Below, one piece after another: positions 8,571-15,926 of a stretch of DNA of 64,000 nt (positions within the stretch are counted from its first letter, which is position 1; every line of letters begins with the position of its first letter). Both the position numbers and the translations under genes were made by a program. The notes under the pieces were generated by a model that saw only the letters and a list, made by a program, of their open reading frames with translations, did no database searches and was not told where the DNA came from. Location: contig NW_013657623.1 of the NCBI RefSeq assembly GCF_000142905.1, positions 70,494 through 134,493 on the forward strand. The letters are read 5' to 3'. Origin of the DNA: Thecamonas trahens ATCC 50062 (lineage: Eukaryota > Protista > Apusomonadida).

Positions 8571-9554
8571 ATGCCGATGAGAGTTTGCACAGGTGCGCCA
8601 TACCCATACCCATACCCATACCCATACTCACCTCACTTCACCTCCCGCTCATGTTGCTCACACTTGCCGGCTCTGGTGGCCTGTCTGCGGCTGTCTGCGG
8701 CACTCCTCGCCCTGGCTGTGGCCGCCAATGCCTACGCCCTCGCCTCACACTCGTGGTACACCACCACTCCACAGGCAGGGGCCGTGCCTACCACCTGGGG
8801 CACACGAGTCATCTGTGCACACACCTCGCCTCTCCCCACATGTACCATTTTATCTGCCTTGCATTTGTTGCCATCATCATCGCCATCATCATCGGCATCA
8901 TCATCGGCATCATCGGCATCATCGGCATCATCGGCATCATCGGCATCACCATCGCCATCGCCATCGCATCAACTCCTTCCACATCTCACTCCGCTTGCAG
9001 GCAATGCTCATGCTCTTGTATCGGCTGGTATTGCGGCAATGGTTGGCTTGTGGATCGGTCTGCTGGCAAGTTTGGTTGCCTCAGCTTTGTCGCTCGTCGC
9101 TGCGAGCGCTCCTGAGCAGCCGATGCCCATTCATGTCCGATCGTTTGGCCTTGCTGCTGCTGTGGCTGCTGCTGCTCTATTCGCTACAGCAGTTGGCATT
9201 GGCCTCTTTCTTGCCCTCGGCGTCTACTCGATCTCGACTATCACCCACGCCGCCGCAGGCTCGTCGTTTCGTGACGGGTTCTGGGTGGCGGTTGTGGGCA
9301 TGGCAAGCACTGCCATCGCCGTCGCGCTCTTGCTTGGCGGCGGCAGACAAGCTCGAGATCTTGCTGTGGCTGACTATACTCGATTGTGGATCAATACCGA
9401 TGGGCCGTCGTGGCACAACTCACCCCCGCTTCACCCATCTTTGCCACGGCCAGCGTCGCGCCCGCGGACCGACTCCGCCACTCGCCCTCTTCTCGCCCCA
9501 TCGCCCGGGTCACCAGCTCAAAGTCCAGGACGTCGCCGCCCAGGAAAGCTCTGA
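8571..9554 (+). CDS. Four-TM claudin/PMP22/SUR7-superfamily-like membrane protein (start uncertain)
   Basis: TM1 followed by W, then WGTRVIC...C in the first loop, three more hydrophobic helices, SFRDGFWVAVVG before TM4; Ser/Ala microsatellite insert. Confidence 0.5.
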   Translation: MPMRVCTGAPYPYPYPYPYSPHFTSRSCCSHLPALVACLRLSAALLALAVAANAYALASHSWYTTTPQAGAVPTTWGTRVICAHTSPLPTCTILSALHLLPSSSPSSSASSSASSASSASSASSASPSPSPSHQLLPHLTPLAGNAHALVSAGIAAMVGLWIGLLASLVASALSLVAASAPEQPMPIHVRSFGLAAAVAAAALFATAVGIGLFLALGVYSISTITHAAAGSSFRDGFWVAVVGMASTAIAVALLLGGGRQARDLAVADYTRLWINTDGPSWHNSPPLHPSLPRPASRPRTDSATRPLLAPSPGSPAQSPGRRRPGKL

Positions 9555-10060: not shown

Positions 10061-13000
10061 ATGGTAGAGACGGTGCTAGGCGTGGCACTCACGGGACTGG
10101 CGACTGTGTCAATTATACTCTCTGTAATTGTGGTGTATGCAGCTGTTAATGATGCACTTTTGTCAAGACTACGTGGACTACGTCAAGTTGCATTTCTGGC
10201 TGTCTTTGATGTGGCCTCCTCGCTCCAGTTTCTCTTTGTCCTCACAGACTTTACCTCGCATCGCGTCTTTTGTGTCGTCGAGGCTGTTCAGACTCAGTTC
10301 TCTTTTGTCATGTGGCTTGGTATGCATACTACCCTCTCGCTCCTTGTCCTCTTTCAAACTCGATCAGAGCACTCGTCCACAAAAACGTTGATGAACGAGT
10401 GGCTCTCTCTCGCAGGTGTAACTGCCATCGCTCTCCTCACCGTTCTCTGGATGTCGCTCCCTTGCGAGTCGGCCATCGAGGCTCTTCCCTACGCCGCAAG
10501 CCTCTGCTGGATGCGTGACGACTCAGAGTACTCGTGCCGCCTCTTGCTCTTTGATATCCCCTGCCAGTTTGCCATGGCCTGCAACGCCTACGTCCTAGTC
10601 GCTGCCGCCCGTCTCGAGGCCTCCAAGCAGCTCCCCTGGGCTCGCACTCTTCGGACCTACACCATGCTCTACTCGATTGTCTTTCTCGGCGCCTTTGCCC
10701 CGTACGTTACCTCCTTCTGGTACGTTGCCCTCACCGGCTCAACCTCGTCACAGCTCCCGCCCGCCGTCAACGCTTTCATCCTCCTCGCCTGGGCCGGCCA
10801 TGGCGCCATCAACTCGGCCGTCTTTCTTCCGCTCTGGTATGGCGTGTCGCGGACAAAGGTCCTCCTTGGTGGCTACTCTACCCTTCCGCAGGATCTCGAG
10901 ATCTCACACCTCCGCCGCCTGCAAGAGTGGGAGAAGCTCGTCCAGAGCCTCACCGGCCTGGTGACCTCAGCCTCTGGCGGCGCCCACGCCGCTCCGCACC
11001 GCGGCCTCTTCCAGCGCTACTGCCGCTCGTCCATGCTGCTTGCCAAGCCGACGAGTGCCGCGCGCCTTCAGCGCACTTCGCGCCCGACCTCGCCGATCCT
11101 GGAAGACGAGCTCGCCTCGCTCCGCGACACCTCGCTCAGCCTTGGCTCGGACGACATTGACGTCACCCATGGCGGATCCGGCGGAGGGGGCCTCTTCCCC
11201 TCCCTCGGCGCAGACGACCGTGCTGCACGCGCCCAGTACCGCTCTCTCTTCTCCTACGAACAGCTGTCAGTTGCGGGCGCAGAGTCGGTCCCTCTCCTTG
11301 GCCCACACCTCATGGTCCACCAAGGCCCGCTCTCGCTCCGCTGGGGAAGGCCGGGCGAGGGCTCGGGCGCCTCCACTCCGCGTGCCGTTCCCGGCTCCCC
11401 ACACACCCCGGCCGTCACCGCCACCGCCGGCAGCGTGCTCGCTGACGAGCGCGGTAGCCTGTATGCGACGAGCTCGCCCGGTCGCGCCTCTCTGGCAGCC
11501 TCGGCGCCCACCCTCTTCTCCACTCTTTTCCGCACAAGCTCCGCCGCCTCGCCCATCGCCGGCTCGGGCTCCGCGAGCGGCGTCTCGTCGTCGGCCGGCT
11601 CGGGCCTCGGCTCCAAAAAGTTCAAGCCGTACCTGTTCCGCCTTGCCGGTGAGACGCTCTACTACTACCTCCCCCGCGCTGCGCCCGACGGCGAGACCCT
11701 CCGCCCAGCCTCGCTCTTCCGCACCGTCCGTGGCATGGAGCCGGCCGCCCTCACCTCGATGATCAAGGCCACCGACTTTGCTGGCGCCATCCCACTCGCT
11801 GGGGCCACCATTGTGGCTAGCTGGCGGCGCGGGAGCGACTCGTGCGACGACGATGATGACGAGGCCGCGCAAGGCTGGCCAGGTTCGGGGAGCACAAGTC
11901 AAGCCGACGCTGCCGGCGCATACATCATTCGTATTCTGCAAGAAGGCCAGATCTTTGAGCTCCGCGCAGACACACTCGACGAGGCCGAGGTCTGGCTGGC
12001 CAAGTTGCAGGAGCTCGATCCGGGCGGTGTGCGCCATGTCGAGGTCGTCTCCGAGGGTGGGACACCGATGCTTGAGCTCGGCGGGCCGACTTGCTCCGTC
12101 TGCATTGCCCGCTACCCGCTCGGCGCCCGCCGGGCAGCGACCTGGATGCGCTCGCGTGACGACGCCGTCTTTGTTGCCGGCTACCTCGACCACATGCGCC
12201 TTTCGCTTGCCGCCAACAACGAGGTTGCGGCCCGGCTTGCCGCCGTCCCCTCCATGTACCCCGTCGCCTTCTCGCCGTCCACCTTTCTCCTCGAGGTTAT
12301 CGGCCTCCACACGGTCAACGCCATTGGCTATGTCGTCCAAGAGTCGCTGCCACTGCAGGTCAGCGCCATGCTGGGCATCTTTGGCCTTGAGGGCTTTCTT
12401 GAGGAATTTGTCATGCACCCGCGCCGCGGCTGGGGCTCGCACGGCTACGGCGCGCGCAACTACGTCGCGCTCTCGCTCGCAGACCTGGAGACGCTGCGGA
12501 AGGACTCGGCTCTGCTCGCCTCGTTTGGCCTCACCGGCTACGCCGTCCAAGTCAGCGTCGTCTTTGTCTCGGGCTGGTCCCGCCTTGATTCCTTCACCCG
12601 GGCCACCGTCGCCGCCCAGTTTGCCCGACTCCGGGCCATTCCGCAGTCGTTTGACGTTGGCAAGTTTGTCCTTCTCCGCATCATCGACTTTGTGCCGGGC
12701 GTCGCCGCACCGTCATCGTGGAGCGGCCTCTGCGGCGCCCGCTTTGAGCGCGGTTCTACCGCCTCGGGCTACCAGGAGCTGTTCATGAACAAGGTCGCGC
12801 TCGAGCTGCAATCACCGCAGTCGCGCATGGCCAACTCTATGGCCTCTGCTGCGAGCACTTCGTTCTACGTCGCCCAGCCGGCGCACCCAAGCCCCTCCGC
12901 TGGCCTTGTGCGCACCATTTCGGGCTCGTCGACCACCTCGTCTGTCTCTTCCTTCTCGCCCGTCAAGTCGTTTGTTGCCCGCGAGACCACGCCGCTGCTC

Positions 13001-14703
13001 GGCGACGAGCGCTCGTCGCAGACGCTCTCGGCTCTGGCCGCCCTTAGTGGCGTCGCCCAGCCGCGGACCGTCGTTGACTTTCTTTCCCGACCGGGCTCGA
13101 CCGTGAGCGAGTACGAGAGTGCTCAGCCGGCGAGCCGGCTCACCTTTGGCAACACCTCGCTCAACGGCTCACTGCCAACCATTGCGCCTGCCGTCCGCGG
13201 CGACGGAAGTGATCGGAGCAGCGGGAGCGAGGGACGGGTGAGCAACCGCGGTCTCGCACTGGCTCTCGTTTGGGTCCTCTTTGCCGCCTTCCTCGTTGGC
13301 TCGCTCTATGCCTTTCCGCTCTACGTCGCAGACCTGCGCGCCTTCCACAGGCTCGACGGCAACTCGGACGCCCTCGTCATTGCCGCGCTTTACATCTTTG
13401 GCTTTTACTTTGCCCTGCCTACCGGCTACCTCTATCGTGTGGCCGGCATCCGCGGCGGGCTCCTCGGCTCGAGTGGCCTCGTCGTCACTGGCTACGCCCT
13501 ACTCTATGCTGACCAGCGGGATGTTGTGCGGATGACAGCAGCGTGGCAGCTCGGCCTCTGCTTTGTTGTGGTTGGCATGGGCTCCAACGGTGTTGTCATC
13601 GGCGCCGTTGCCGCCCTCCTCAACGCGCTGCCTCTCTCGGCGGCGCTCGCTGCAGGCACTCTCTATGCTGGCACTGCCATGGGCGCGCTCGGGGCGGGTG
13701 CGCTCTACACCCACACCTTTGACCGGTCGCTCGAGTATCTGTTCTTGGCGGAGCTCCTCTCTGGCGCAGTGCTCATTGTAGGGAGTTTTTCCTTGTGCCG
13801 CGCGCCCGCGGATGGGATGGCGTCTTCGCCGCCGCCTCGGGCGCCCGTCTCCAGGCCATCCTGCGATACTCCAAGTCGTCGCCGTGGCTTGTTTCTGAGA
13901 TCTTCTCCACCTCGGCGAGTAGTGCGAACGCCCAGGATGGCCGGGGCGAGGGCATCGAGGCCGGAGGAAGCATGGAGGAGCACCAGGCGTCGGCCCTCAT
14001 TGCTGCCGCTCTGGACCATATGGATCATGCGCTTACCGGCCTCTCGCTCTTTGTCCATCCGGAGTTTGTCCTCCTTGGCGTTGTCGTCTCGCTCGTCCAG
14101 GGCACGTCTGAGCTTGTCTCGTCGTACATTGTCAATCTGGAGGACCGGGCTGCACCGTCGCAGATCTACATGCGGTTCCTGGTCATCTTTGTCGGGCGTG
14201 CCATCGGCTCGTTCCTCATGGGCTCGGGCTGCACCCTCTTCACTCCGCGGAGCACCCCTGTTCGCTACTCGAAGCCGTACTCGTACTGGCTGGTTGGTGC
14301 CTGCCTCCTCGTCTCGATGTCGCACATTCTGCTCACCCGCGACGATCCGTCGCTCATCGAGTTTGGCCTCCTCGCCGCCGGCCTCCTCTACGGTGGCCTC
14401 GACGTCACCTTTTTGCTGCTCTTGCAAAAGTTCTTTGGCGCCGCCAACATTGCCCTGAACTACGCCTCACTCACCTCGGTCCAGGCTGCTGGCTCGCTGC
14501 TCCTGCAGGTGTACGCGCAGCGGGAGATCAACTCGAGCTGCTACGGGGCCAAGTGCTTCACTAACCTCTTCCTCATCGCCTCCACCTGCTGCTTTATGGG
14601 CGCCGGCTTTGGGCTGCTCCTGTGGCGCCTGCGCGCCCGGGATCGGTTGCGGCGGTCAAAGGTCTCTCGCACCGTGGCGGCAGCCACAGTCGGGATGCAG
14701 TAG
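10061..14703 (+). CDS. Fusion: CAR/Git3-like 7TM receptor + PH domain + degenerate PIP-kinase domain + MFS/nodulin-like transporter; one-base frameshift at 13786-13790
   Basis: 7 hydrophobic helices in aa 1-260 (LAVFD, FCVVEA, CW, GAINSAVF). PH motifs KKFKPYLFRL..LYYY..GAIPL..FELRADTLDEAEVWLAKL. PIPK-like LRKDSALLAS / RIIDF / YQELFM. About 12 TMs from 13250; one extra T in TTTTT joins the 13795-14703 frame. Confidence 0.8.
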
Positions 14704-14808: not shown

Positions 14809-15585
14809 TCACCGACCCTTGAGAAAGAACCGAGATGCCCCGTCTGCGGCCTTGTAGTGGACCACCCTACCGACGACGCCGCTCGCTTCTGGGGCGGCGG
14901 CCACAGCGATGCTCCCATGCACCTCGCGCGAGTAACCTGTTGCAAGAGGCGCAACCGTGAGGACGTAGTCTGACCGCAGCACGGCGAGATCCATGGCCAA
15001 AGTCGCCGTTCCAGAAGTCGCAGTGACAACCAGACACCGAGCTCTCCCGCCTCGGCCACCATCGTCACCAGCACTCCACTCGTGGAGGCGGGCGAAGAGG
15101 CCGAGGACCTCCGCATCGTCGTATCCGACACCATACACTAGAGCATCGAGGCCCTCGACCACGACCAGGGCCGGATCAAAGGCTATCACCCGCTCAGCCA
15201 CGAGTTCTAGCGATTCTCTCTCCGAAGGCGAGCCACCTGGAGCCAGACCCGTCACCATGGTACCCACCACATCCTCGACCATGATAGCGCCGGCCGATCT
15301 CATCGCCGCCATGTCCACGCCGATTTTAGCCCAGAGCGTGTCCAAGGTATCCCCCCCTGCCGCCGCGGTGATAACAGCAATATTCCCTCTACCATGCCCA
15401 TGCCCATCACTCTCATGACCTTGATCACCTCTGTTACCGCCCTCCCCGTGCCGAGCCACGAGGTGAGCCACCGGCAAATGACTCGGACCGCTCGCCGCAG
15501 CTTCGCCCACTACCGCCACCACTGTCGGCTCTACAAACGGACCCCGTGGCCACCCGAGTACAGCCTCGAGCTCTGCAAAGGCCAT
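14809..15585 (-). CDS. ELP6: Elongator complex protein 6
   Basis: KIGVDM, LVVVEGLDAL, VAPLATGYSREVHG, HYKAADGASRFFLKG match the ELP6 RecA-like fold and its C-terminal signature. Confidence 0.8.
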   Translation of the reverse strand: MAFAELEAVLGWPRGPFVEPTVVAVVGEAAASGPSHLPVAHLVARHGEGGNRGDQGHESDGHGHGRGNIAVITAAAGGDTLDTLWAKIGVDMAAMRSAGAIMVEDVVGTMVTGLAPGGSPSERESLELVAERVIAFDPALVVVEGLDALVYGVGYDDAEVLGLFARLHEWSAGDDGGRGGRARCLVVTATSGTATLAMDLAVLRSDYVLTVAPLATGYSREVHGSIAVAAAPEASGVVGRVVHYKAADGASRFFLKGR

Positions 15586-15926
15586 GTGGAAGAACGGCGA
15601 GGCGAGTCGCGTCTGTCGCACCCCGTCGTGTCGCCGTCTTGTGTCGCCTCTCGTCGTGTCGCCTCGTCGGTTCGTGCCGCTTTCGAACCTCGCCGAGTGG
15701 CACCCAGTTGATGGTGACGGGGATCATGATGAGGATGGGGGGGAGGGGGGGGGGATCAGATAGCGACAAACAGATCAGTACTGGAGATATACATATAAGA
15801 AAAGACTGGATGGCTTGGAATGGATGACAGTAAACCAGTAGCCCAAGCCAGCCGCCGGGAAAGCAGAGCCAGCAAACAACCACTGCGCCAGCCGATGTGC
15901 CCCGTGCCAGCCACCTGGCCACCTGG

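What the first reader, a model, noticed from the sequence alone, without database searches (positions are those of the whole stretch)
10061..14703. Four-part fusion: 7TM receptor, PH, pseudo-PIP-kinase and MFS transporter
The N-terminal 7TM resembles cAMP-receptor/Git3 GPCRs. A PH domain (about 11610-12015) precedes a PIP5K-like domain (about 12140-12800: MRSRDDAVFV, FLLEVIGLH, YVVQESL, LRKDSALLASFGLTGYAV, LRIIDFV, YQELFM). The IIK lysine, DLKGS and MDYSL motifs are degenerate, which suggests a pseudokinase. GPCR-PIPK fusions are known (Dictyostelium RpkA, oomycete GK proteins). A version with an added PH domain and an in-frame ~12-TM nodulin/MFS transporter is an architecture I do not recognise. 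The first half of the MFS is in the same uninterrupted ORF, so the fusion does not depend on the frameshift. Inference: a phosphoinositide-sensing receptor-transporter.
Basis: partly seen in the sequence, partly recalled or inferred. Interest (0 to 1): 0.82.

Follow-up and report, generated by a model that had tools for sequence, protein, structure and literature searches.

The report
GPCR–PH–dead PIP-kinase–MFS transporter fusion
This Thecamonas trahens gene encodes one very large membrane protein that joins a GPCR-like receptor, a PH domain, a catalytically dead relative of phosphoinositide kinases and a 12-helix MFS transporter; this layout is conserved in a tiny protist family and has not been described, and the copy in this window carries a one-base frame break.

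Summary
ORF 10061-14458 and the +2-frame ORF 13795-14703 together encode one gene with four modules.
- The N-terminal 7TM models as a GPCR fold, and all Foldseek and Atlas hits are GPCRs.
- The split PH domain matches 30 PH domains of the same genome (hhalign 96.9%).
- The middle domain is a remote homologue of PIP kinases (hhalign 94-95%, E about 1e-7; column shuffles score 23 or less against 49-58). It lacks the DLKGS motif and one or other catalytic Asp in every member, so it is a pseudokinase.
- The C-terminal part is a 6+6 TM MFS.

The same layout is uninterrupted in a paralogue in this genome (Thecamonas trahens AMSG_04709) and in three metagenomic relatives. Nothing else matched among 1.84 billion representatives. 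The published GPCR-PIPK inventory lists only the two canonical T. trahens genes and missed this family.

The window copy has a 1-nt deficit at a T5 run (13786-13790). The downstream half is 68% identical to the orthologue with dN/dS 0.18, so the break is an assembly error or very recent.

The AF2 model of the middle domain failed (pLDDT 37), so the fold test is open. The proposed function, a lipid-tethered receptor-transporter, is inference. This is a new variant of the GPCR-PIPK kind.

The parts
10061..14703 (+). Whole gene: 7TM - PH - pseudo-PIPK - MFS, read in frame 1 to about 13795 and in the +2 frame from 13795 to the stop at 14701-14703
10079..10828 (+). Seven-helix GPCR-like domain (aa 7-256). 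Invariant Cys71 at the top of TM3 and Cys149 in a beta-hairpin ECL2.
   Evidence: Hydropathy. AF2 pLDDT 64, pTM 0.58. Foldseek PDB hits are all GPCRs, E about 1e-4, TM 0.55-0.63. Atlas structure hits TM 0.64-0.74. Atlas features point to Dicty_CAR/7tm_2 at 0.96. hhalign to the 7TM of the canonical T. trahens GPCR-PIPKs: 43.6%, E 2.4e-4, in register.
10910..10957 (+). Invariant juxtamembrane helix LRRLQEWE..L...LTG (aa 284-299), helix-8-like. It begins with LR but does not fit the LRx9GI motif.
11279..11311 (+). Conserved (A)ESxPLLGPHL motif just before PH strand beta1. It fits the acidic dileucine pattern [DE]xxxL[LI].
   Evidence: Alignment. The sorting-signal reading is inference from general knowledge.
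11318..12016 (+). Split PH domain. Beta1 lies at 11318-11344. A low-complexity insert specific to this clade lies at about 11345-11614. Beta2 to the C-terminal helix lies at 11615-12016.
   Evidence: Pfam PH is the only family hit in 4 of 4 members, best E 0.0024, below the cut-off. hhalign against 30 T. trahens PH domains: 96.9%, E 1.5e-10, score 62.2 against 16 or less for shuffles.
12023..12835 (+). PIPK-derived pseudokinase domain (aa 655-925). GLEGF replaces DLKGS, TGYAV replaces MDYSL, IID is retained, and an invariant Arg684 lies in CIARYPL where IIK is expected.
12983..13099 (+). Conserved linker between the pseudokinase and the MFS. It holds an ETTPLLG acidic-dileucine-like motif (12983-13003) and a 29-aa peptide (13013-13099) identical to the orthologue despite 23 synonymous nucleotide differences.
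13250..13795 (+). MFS N-half, TM1-TM6, in the same frame as the 7TM/PH/pseudokinase. Motif A between TM2 and TM3 is degenerate (GYLYRVAGIRG at 13421-13459).
13786..13790 (+). T5 homopolymer at the frame break. There is a one-nucleotide deficit relative to the homologues, and no residues are missing on either side (16 residues between FL and VP in both).
13795..14703 (+). MFS central loop and C-half (TM7-TM12) in the +2 frame, including the stop codon.
   Evidence: 68% identity to P0001 residues 1328-1636. dN/dS about 0.18. Hydropathy. Weak NFD4_C hit, E 0.046.
13796..14458 (+). Out-of-frame tail of the long ORF (221 codons: S 23%, R 18%, P 11%). Not homologous to any relative and not part of the protein.

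Best explanation
This is a real single gene of Thecamonas trahens. It belongs to a very small family with two paralogues in this genome and three uncultured relatives. The product is a roughly 19-TM protein with this order of parts: an N-out GPCR-like 7TM; a conserved helix-8-like segment; a cytosolic split PH domain; a cytosolic domain descended from a phosphatidylinositol-phosphate kinase that has lost its catalytic residues (a pseudokinase); a conserved linker; and a 12-TM MFS permease of the monocarboxylate/oxalate-formate/nodulin-like sort. What is shown: the four modules, their order in one frame, purifying selection on the domains and on the last linker, and the loss of the catalytic motifs. 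What is inferred: the PH and pseudo-PIPK pair no longer makes PIP2. Instead it acts as a membrane-apposed lipid- or nucleotide-binding coupling module held between two membrane domains, so that occupancy of the 7TM pocket and/or the local phosphoinositide identity controls the MFS gate, or transport status is signalled outward. This would be a 'transceptor' comparable in logic to LYCHOS/GPR155. The two conserved ExxPLL motifs, together with the endosomal/phagosomal location reported for GPCR-PIPKs, suggest an endolysosomal or phagosomal membrane. The frame break in the window copy is a one-base deficit in a T5 run. It is most likely an assembly or sequencing error, or a very recent lesion.
For: One frame spans all modules in the window up to MFS TM6. 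Uninterrupted 1440-1639 aa homologues have the same order. NCBI annotates the paralogue as one 1511-aa protein, AMSG_04709. GPCR fold. PH. PIPK homology: hhalign 89-95%, E 2e-6 to 7e-8; shuffled, reversed and cross-domain controls score 23 or less against 49-58. All 13 PDB hits are PIP4K2A/B at the L..L..D..FL..MDYSL block. 30 of 30 Atlas clusters are PIP5K. Motif loss in every member. MFS_1 is above the cut-off in the orthologue. dN/dS is 0.20 for the 7TM, 0.27 for the kinase-like domain, 0.26 for linker 2 and 0.18 for the MFS C-half; a 29-aa linker peptide is identical with 23 synonymous changes. The genome has no stand-alone copies of the 7TM or MFS. The topology is consistent, with a cytosolic 7TM C-terminus feeding a cytosolic MFS N-terminus. 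GPCR-PIPK localisation and the LYCHOS architecture come from PMC12716839.
Against: The AF2 model of PH plus kinase-like region was unusable (pLDDT 36.9), and its fold searches were meaningless, so the PIPK fold is not shown structurally. HMM-to-sequence searches do not connect the domain to PIPKs; only profile-profile comparison does. There are only five distinct sequences. No expression, localisation, ligand, lipid-binding or transport data exist. The canonical basic PIP-binding signature of PH domains is not evident. Motif A of the MFS is degenerate in this clade. The window copy is frame-broken in the assembly.
Confidence: 0.72

Rival explanations
1. The window copy is a genuine, recently inactivated pseudogene or a truncated variant. 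The frameshift is real, the protein ends in a nonsense tail after MFS TM6, and the paralogue AMSG_04709 carries the function.
For: The break is in the assembly, and only one copy of this DNA exists in the genome. A paralogue with intact architecture exists.
Against: This is the only lesion in about 1550 codons. The downstream 302 codons are 68% identical to the orthologue, end at the same stop position, and have the lowest dN/dS of the gene. The lesion sits in a homopolymer, a typical place for an error. The two paralogues are only about 30% identical, so they are old and not redundant copies.
Confidence: 0.25
2. The frame is restored by splicing. A 77-nt GT...AG interval (13778-13854, length 2 mod 3) joins frame 1 to the +2 frame and gives an intact but 26-residue-shorter MFS.
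For: The interval starts GTAGGG, ends CTCCAG, and has exactly the length class needed. T. trahens has introns.
Against: The interval encodes, in the +2 frame, a peptide homologous to the orthologue (VP..W[DE]G[VI]F..AS..RL), so it is ancestrally coding. Splicing would remove the end of TM6. GT and AG at a suitable spacing are easily found by chance.
Confidence: 0.07
3. The middle domain is still an active lipid kinase with unconventional catalytic residues, which would make the protein a true GPCR-PIPK with extra domains.
For: Each member keeps one of the two catalytic Asp positions (IID in this clade, DYS in two clade-B members). An invariant Arg sits where the ATP-binding Lys is expected.
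Against: No member keeps both Asp residues. DLKGS is replaced by GLEGF, NLEGF, NLLGA, GVDGT or ELDAA. The G-loop GKSGS is unrecognisable. Lys-to-Arg is the classical kinase-dead change (general knowledge). The activation-loop region is short and variable.
Confidence: 0.06
4. The long ORF is an artefact of GC-rich sequence. It is really two or three neighbouring genes (receptor, soluble protein, transporter) that merely lack stops between them, or that are expressed from internal promoters.
For: Long stop-free frames are common at 63% GC, and many spurious overlapping ORFs exist here. Linker 1 evolves neutrally, with dN/dS about 1.
Against: Five sequences as low as 27-30% identical all keep one frame through every linker, and their length differences are in whole codons. 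Linker 2 is under strong purifying selection in this frame. No stand-alone version of any part was found in the genome or in 1.84 billion representatives.
Confidence: 0.04

Closest known systems
GPCR-PIPKs (Dictyostelium RpkA, oomycete GK proteins; 'GPCR-bigrams', van den Hoogen et al. 2018, PMC5784254)
   Same: An N-terminal 7TM of cAMP-receptor/class-B flavour is followed in the cytosol by a PIPK-type domain. The same genome holds two canonical members (L020 = A0A0L0DRJ2, L021 = A0A0L0DB47). The 7TM aligns weakly but in register with theirs.
   Different: The PIPK domain is invisible to Pfam and lacks the DLKGS motif and a complete pair of catalytic Asp residues. There is no LRx9GI motif. 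A PH domain is inserted before the kinase-like domain, and a complete MFS transporter follows it. The published inventory does not list this family.
GPR155 / LYCHOS (transporter-like domain + 7TM + DEP, 17 TM; PMC12716839)
   Same: One polypeptide joins a solute-carrier-type membrane domain and a GPCR-type 7TM with a cytosolic signalling domain. It is a precedent for a receptor-transporter hybrid on an endolysosomal membrane.
   Different: In LYCHOS the order is reversed, with the transporter first. The transporter there is PIN/auxin-carrier-like rather than MFS. The cytosolic module is DEP rather than PH plus pseudo-PIPK. No sequence relationship was found.
Type I/II PIP kinases (PF01504; PIP4K2A/B structures such as 1BO1)
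   Same: Shared sequence blocks are (S/N)TxL..(F/I)xGL, hydrophobic-x-V-x-E/N, L..L..D..(F/L)L....(D/G)Y(S/A)(L/V), (L/I)(R/G)IID(F/I)(L/V) and Y...F. hhalign gives 85-95%.
   Different: The catalytic Lys, DLKGS and one Asp are lost. The activation loop with the KK specificity motif is absent. The domain is embedded between two membrane domains.
MFS transporters of the OFA / monocarboxylate (SfMCT) / nodulin-like group
   Same: A 6+6 TM layout. Pfam MFS_1 is above the cut-off in the orthologue. The best NCBIfam similarities are SfMCT (E about 1e-6) and the oxalate/formate antiporter family.
   Different: All subfamily hits are far below their cut-offs. No stand-alone relative was found by the word search. 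Motif A is degenerate in this clade. The central loop is long, at about 100 aa.

Membership tests
GPCR-PIPK (GPCR-bigram) | N-terminal seven-helix domain with a GPCR fold | tested here: met
   7 hydrophobic segments. AF2 model pLDDT 64. All Foldseek PDB and Atlas matches are GPCRs.
GPCR-PIPK (GPCR-bigram) | C-terminal domain recognised as PIP5K (PF01504) with the DLKGS and MDYSL catalytic motifs | tested here: not met
   No Pfam PIP5K hit at E up to 1. The motifs are replaced by GLEGF and TGYAV in the window protein and are degenerate in all members.
GPCR-PIPK (GPCR-bigram) | LRx9GI motif between the 7TM and the kinase domain | tested here: not met
   A regex search found none in the linker of any member. 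A different invariant helix, LRRLQEWE..L...LTG, lies there instead. The two canonical T. trahens GPCR-PIPKs also lack a strict match.
PIPK superfamily (homology, not activity) | Significant profile similarity to bona fide PIPK catalytic domains over most of the domain | tested here: met
   hhalign 89.2% (E 2.2e-6), 93.9% (E 1.5e-7) and 94.6% (E 7e-8) over 185-190 columns. Shuffled, reversed and cross-domain controls score 23 or less.
PIPK superfamily (homology, not activity) | Two-lobe PIPK/protein-kinase-like 3D fold | tested here: inconclusive
   AF2 with a 4-sequence alignment gave pLDDT 36.9. The Foldseek and VIA searches of that model are uninformative.
PH domain (PF00169) | Pfam score above the gathering cut-off | tested here: not met
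   Best E 0.0024, 12.7-15.9 bits against a 25.1-bit cut-off. PH is the only family hit in 4 of 4 members.
PH domain (PF00169) | Profile similarity covering beta2 to the C-terminal helix, including the conserved Trp | tested here: met
   hhalign against 30 PH domains of the same genome: 96.9%, E 1.5e-10, 83 of 102 columns. Shuffles score 16 or less.
PH domain (PF00169) | Basic K-Xn-(K/R)-X-R phosphoinositide-binding signature in beta1-beta2 | tested here: inconclusive
   By eye, basic residues are present (KKFKPY in the window protein, R..LR in clade B), but they are not in the canonical register. No structure is available.
Major facilitator superfamily (PF07690) | Twelve TM helices as 6+6, with an MFS_1 profile match above the cut-off | tested here: met
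   MFS_1 scores 38.8-40.4 bits against a 33.4-bit cut-off in orthologue P0001. The window halves are 45% and 70% identical to it. Hydropathy. The window pieces alone fall below the cut-off because the domain is split.
Nodulin-like / NFD4 MFS subfamily | Pfam Nodulin-like (PF06813) or NFD4_C (PF23262) above the cut-off | tested here: not met
   NFD4_C E 0.046 (13.9 bits against 27). Nodulin-like E 0.74 in the paralogue.
GPR155/LYCHOS | N-terminal PIN-like transporter, then a 7TM, then a C-terminal DEP domain | tested here: not met
   The order and domain types differ. There is no DEP or Mem_trans hit in Pfam.

The most novel reading that the evidence does not exclude
A lineage-specific 19-TM 'transceptor': a GPCR-PIPK descendant whose kinase has been converted into a non-catalytic phosphoinositide or nucleotide sensor. 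Together with a PH domain, this sensor mechanically couples a GPCR-type ligand pocket to the gate of an MFS permease on an endolysosomal or phagosomal membrane. It would be the first case of a lipid-kinase-derived pseudokinase regulating a covalently attached transporter, and an origin of the receptor-transporter design independent of LYCHOS.
Probability: 0.25. Interest if true: 0.8.

Novelty: new variant of a known kind. Interest (0 to 1): 0.62.

Why it matters
GPCR-PIPKs are thought to date back to the last eukaryotic common ancestor, yet how the receptor talks to its attached enzyme is unknown. This family shows that the module can lose catalysis while staying under selection, and that it can be wired to a transporter. 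That points to a structural or allosteric role for the PIPK fold next to the membrane. It also adds a second, independent example of a GPCR covalently fused to a solute carrier, after LYCHOS/GPR155. And it shows that Pfam-based inventories of GPCR-bigrams miss divergent members. Because the whole signalling chain is in one polypeptide, the family offers a compact system for testing receptor-to-transporter coupling. Its known range is narrow (one cultured apusomonad and a few marine metagenome contigs), so its importance is conceptual rather than broad.

Tried and rejected
- Pfam on the window pieces gave nothing above the cut-offs.
- A PDB sequence search with the 7TM profile gave nothing relevant.
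- AF2 of PH plus kinase-like region with a 4-sequence alignment gave pLDDT 36.9. Foldseek 'pdb' on that model returned SAS-6/XRCC4 noise. VIA 'pdb_via_wide' returned generic ferredoxin-like two-layer hits for residues 366-484 only.
- An HMM of the middle domain searched against the whole genome found only the two family genes, not the canonical PIPKs.
- BLASTP of the 7TM against the canonical GPCR-PIPKs was marginal (E 0.005 over 34 aa; nothing).
- The strict LRx9GI motif was absent.
- Subfamily origin of the kinase-like domain was unresolved. hhalign gave 85% for type I/II-like, 37% for GPCR-PIPK and 8% for Fab1-like profiles, but these rest on 2-4 sequences each.
- The word search with the orthologue's MFS part found no hits.
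- A literature search for a GPCR-PIPK-MFS fusion found no description. The library is incomplete, so this is weak evidence of absence.
- An intron as the cause of the frame change is judged unlikely because no residues are missing at the junction.
- I did not run complex prediction. I make no specific binding claim, and the shallow alignment would give a poor model.
Full report
**What is there.** Window 10061-14458 is a 1465-codon ORF on the + strand, and a second ORF of 302 codons (13795-14703) lies in the +2 frame. After about codon 1245 the first frame turns into an S/R/P-rich tail with no homology. The second frame continues the protein: it is 68% identical to the C-terminus of the closest relative, right up to the stop. 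Residue counts match the homologue on both sides of the junction (16 residues between FL and VP in both). The break is therefore a one-nucleotide deficit at or next to the T5 run at 13786-13790, not an intron or a rearrangement. I searched the two pieces separately. I did not build or search a joined read-through protein.

**Organism and relatives.** The genome (28.7 Mb, 131 contigs) is Thecamonas trahens ATCC 50062, an apusomonad. The in-genome paralogue on contig C20 is identical to NCBI XP_013758381 / AMSG_04709, which is annotated as 'uncharacterized protein'. An exhaustive phmmer search of 1.84 billion representatives with residues 1-1200 returned six proteins:
- P0001 (1639 aa, 56% identity; Logan and ENA marine assemblies);
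- P0002 (1493 aa; a Tara Oceans metagenome scaffold);
- P0003 (identical to AMSG_04709);
- P0004 (1440 aa);
- two short fragments.

The word-index search found only P0001. All four full-length relatives have the same four parts in one uninterrupted ORF. They form two clades: the window gene with P0001, and AMSG_04709 with P0002 and P0004. The duplication is therefore older than these species. Within T. trahens, neither the 7TM nor the MFS has any other detectable paralogue.

**Module 1, the 7TM.** Hydropathy gives seven segments between aa 7 and 256.
- AF2 with four sequences gave a usable model (pLDDT 64, pTM 0.58) with a beta-hairpin in ECL2.
- The 50 best Foldseek matches listed (of 73 with E ≤ 0.001) were all GPCRs, including Smoothened, FZD4, GPR101, opsins and adhesion GPCRs, with TM 0.5-0.63.
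- The Atlas structure search gave TM 0.64-0.74 to Frizzled, opsin, class B and class C receptors.
- Language-model features point to the Dicty_CAR/7tm_2 clusters (0.96).
- A profile comparison with the 7TM of the two canonical T. trahens GPCR-PIPKs is weak but in register (43.6%, E 2.4e-4). It aligns the invariant TM3 Cys and the ECL2 Cys-Trp.

The GPCR fold is shown. The receptor class is only suggested. G-protein coupling is untested.

**Module 2, the PH domain.** Pfam PH is the only family that all four members touch, but always below its cut-off. A five-sequence profile compared with 30 bona fide PH domains from the same genome gives 96.9% probability, E 1.5e-10, over 83 of 102 columns. 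Column shuffles score 16 or less against 62. The domain is split by long loops. In the window's clade, about 90 low-complexity residues separate beta1 (11318-11344) from beta2 (11615 onward).

**Module 3, the kinase-like domain.** Pfam sees nothing here. Three independent weak-to-moderate lines agree on a PIPK origin:
- A profile search of PDB sequences returns only PIP4K2A/B (13 of 13 hits, E about 0.5), aligned at L..L..D..FL...MDYSL.
- 30 of 30 nearest named Atlas clusters carry PF01504 (score 0.92).
- hhalign against PIPK domains taken from the same genome gives 89% (E 2e-6), rising to 94-95% (E 1.5e-7 to 7e-8, 187-190 columns) with a fifth family member and nine templates.

The controls are clean. 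One hundred column shuffles score 23 or less, the reversed profile scores 21, and cross-domain comparisons score 10-15, against real scores of 49-58.

The alignment places the catalytic motifs as follows:

| Canonical motif | Window | P0001 | AMSG_04709 | P0002 | P0004 |
|---|---|---|---|---|---|
| DLKGS | GLEGF | NLEGF | NLLGA | GVDGT | ELDAA |
| MDYSL | TGYAV | VGYAV | QDYDL | ADYSL | VGYSL |
| IID | IID | IKD | IVN | IVG | LMD |

No member keeps both catalytic Asp residues, and none keeps the DLKGS Asp or Lys. The G-loop is unrecognisable. An invariant Arg (window R684, in CIARYPL) sits at the spacing expected for the IIK lysine; that equivalence is my inference, and the alignment is not confident there. 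The domain is under purifying selection (dN/dS about 0.27). 'Pseudokinase derived from a PIPK' is therefore well supported at sequence level.

**Module 4, the MFS.** The orthologue's C-terminal 508 residues hit Pfam MFS_1 above the cut-off. The best NCBIfam similarities are the L-lactate transporter SfMCT and the oxalate/formate antiporter family, all far below their cut-offs. The NFD4_C and Nodulin-like hits are not significant. Hydropathy fits a 6+6 layout with a central loop of about 100 residues. Clade B keeps a good motif A (G....ERFGPRR). The window's clade has lost the acidic residue (GYLYRVAGIRG). The word search found no stand-alone relative.

**Is it one protein?** Five sequences as low as 27-30% identical keep one frame through all linkers. 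The linker between the pseudokinase and the MFS contains a 29-residue peptide that is identical between the window and P0001 despite 23 nucleotide differences, all of them synonymous. The linker's dN/dS is 0.26. NCBI models the paralogue as one protein. The topology also fits, since the cytosolic C-terminus of a 7TM feeds the cytosolic N-terminus of an MFS. No transcript data could be consulted.

**The frameshift.** This is the only defect in the gene. The downstream half has the lowest dN/dS (0.18) and ends at the orthologous stop. The region is single-copy in the assembly. I favour a homopolymer error or a very recent mutation. A 77-nt GT...AG interval (13778-13854) would also restore the frame, but it would remove 26 codons that are conserved in the orthologue.

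**Comparison with known systems.** The published GPCR-PIPK inventory (PMC5784254) lists two genes for T. trahens. These are A0A0L0DRJ2 and A0A0L0DB47, which I recovered as L020 and L021 with ordinary PIP5K domains. The present family is not in that inventory. It fails three defining features of GPCR-PIPKs: a recognisable catalytic PIPK, the LRx9GI motif, and the two-domain layout. It is therefore a derived variant rather than a member. The only comparable receptor-transporter hybrid I know of in the literature read here is GPR155/LYCHOS, which has a PIN-like transporter, a 7TM and a DEP domain, and sits on the lysosome. That protein is unrelated in sequence and has the opposite domain order.

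**Mechanism (inferred).** The PH and pseudo-PIPK pair is tethered at both ends to the membrane. From general knowledge, PIPKs present a flat basic face to the bilayer and bind phosphoinositide head groups. A catalytically dead copy could retain lipid or nucleotide binding and so act as a sensor or a rigid coupler between the 7TM and the MFS. Two conserved ExxPLL motifs (11279-11311 and 12983-13003) fit the acidic dileucine consensus used by many lysosomal membrane proteins (general knowledge). GPCR-PIPKs are reported on endosomal and phagosomal vesicles. An endolysosomal or phagosomal site is therefore plausible for this phagotrophic flagellate. None of this was testable here.

**Verdict.** The function is open. 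This is a new variant of the GPCR-PIPK/GPCR-bigram kind, already present in public databases only as 'uncharacterized protein'.

Noticed in passing
G000:C61 (L020:1169-3571:+) and G000:C22 (L021:1102-3573:+): The genome's two canonical GPCR-PIPKs (801 and 824 aa; 7tm_2/Dicty_CAR plus PIP5K). They correspond to A0A0L0DRJ2 and A0A0L0DB47 of the published inventory. A strict LRx9G[ILVM] search finds no match in either.
   Followed up: partly
G000:C10 (L022:403-4209:+), C33 (L023:958-6051:+), C4 (L024:34-6594:+): Three FYVE - Cpn60_TCP1 - PIP5K (Fab1/PIKfyve-type) genes of 1269, 1698 and 2187 aa, plus four further PIPK genes (L006-L009). This is a rich phosphoinositide-kinase set for a 28.7-Mb genome.
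   Followed up: partly
window 13778-13854: A 77-nt interval bounded by GT and AG has exactly the length needed to bridge the two frames. An annotation pipeline could call it an intron, but it encodes conserved MFS residues in the +2 frame.
   Followed up: partly
window 13421-13459: MFS motif A (between TM2 and TM3) has lost its acidic residue and the RFGPR core in the window gene and its orthologue. The paralogue clade keeps G....ERFGPRR. The two clades may differ in transport competence.
   Followed up: no
window 11345-11614: An S/A/G/T-rich insert of about 90 residues sits inside the PH beta1-beta2 loop. It is present only in the window's clade and evolves almost neutrally.
   Followed up: no
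window 8571-9554 (+) and 14809-15621 (-): The flanking ORFs (a 327-aa ORF upstream and a 270-aa ORF on the opposite strand downstream) were not analysed. The gene is separated from them by about 500 bp and about 100 bp.
   Followed up: no
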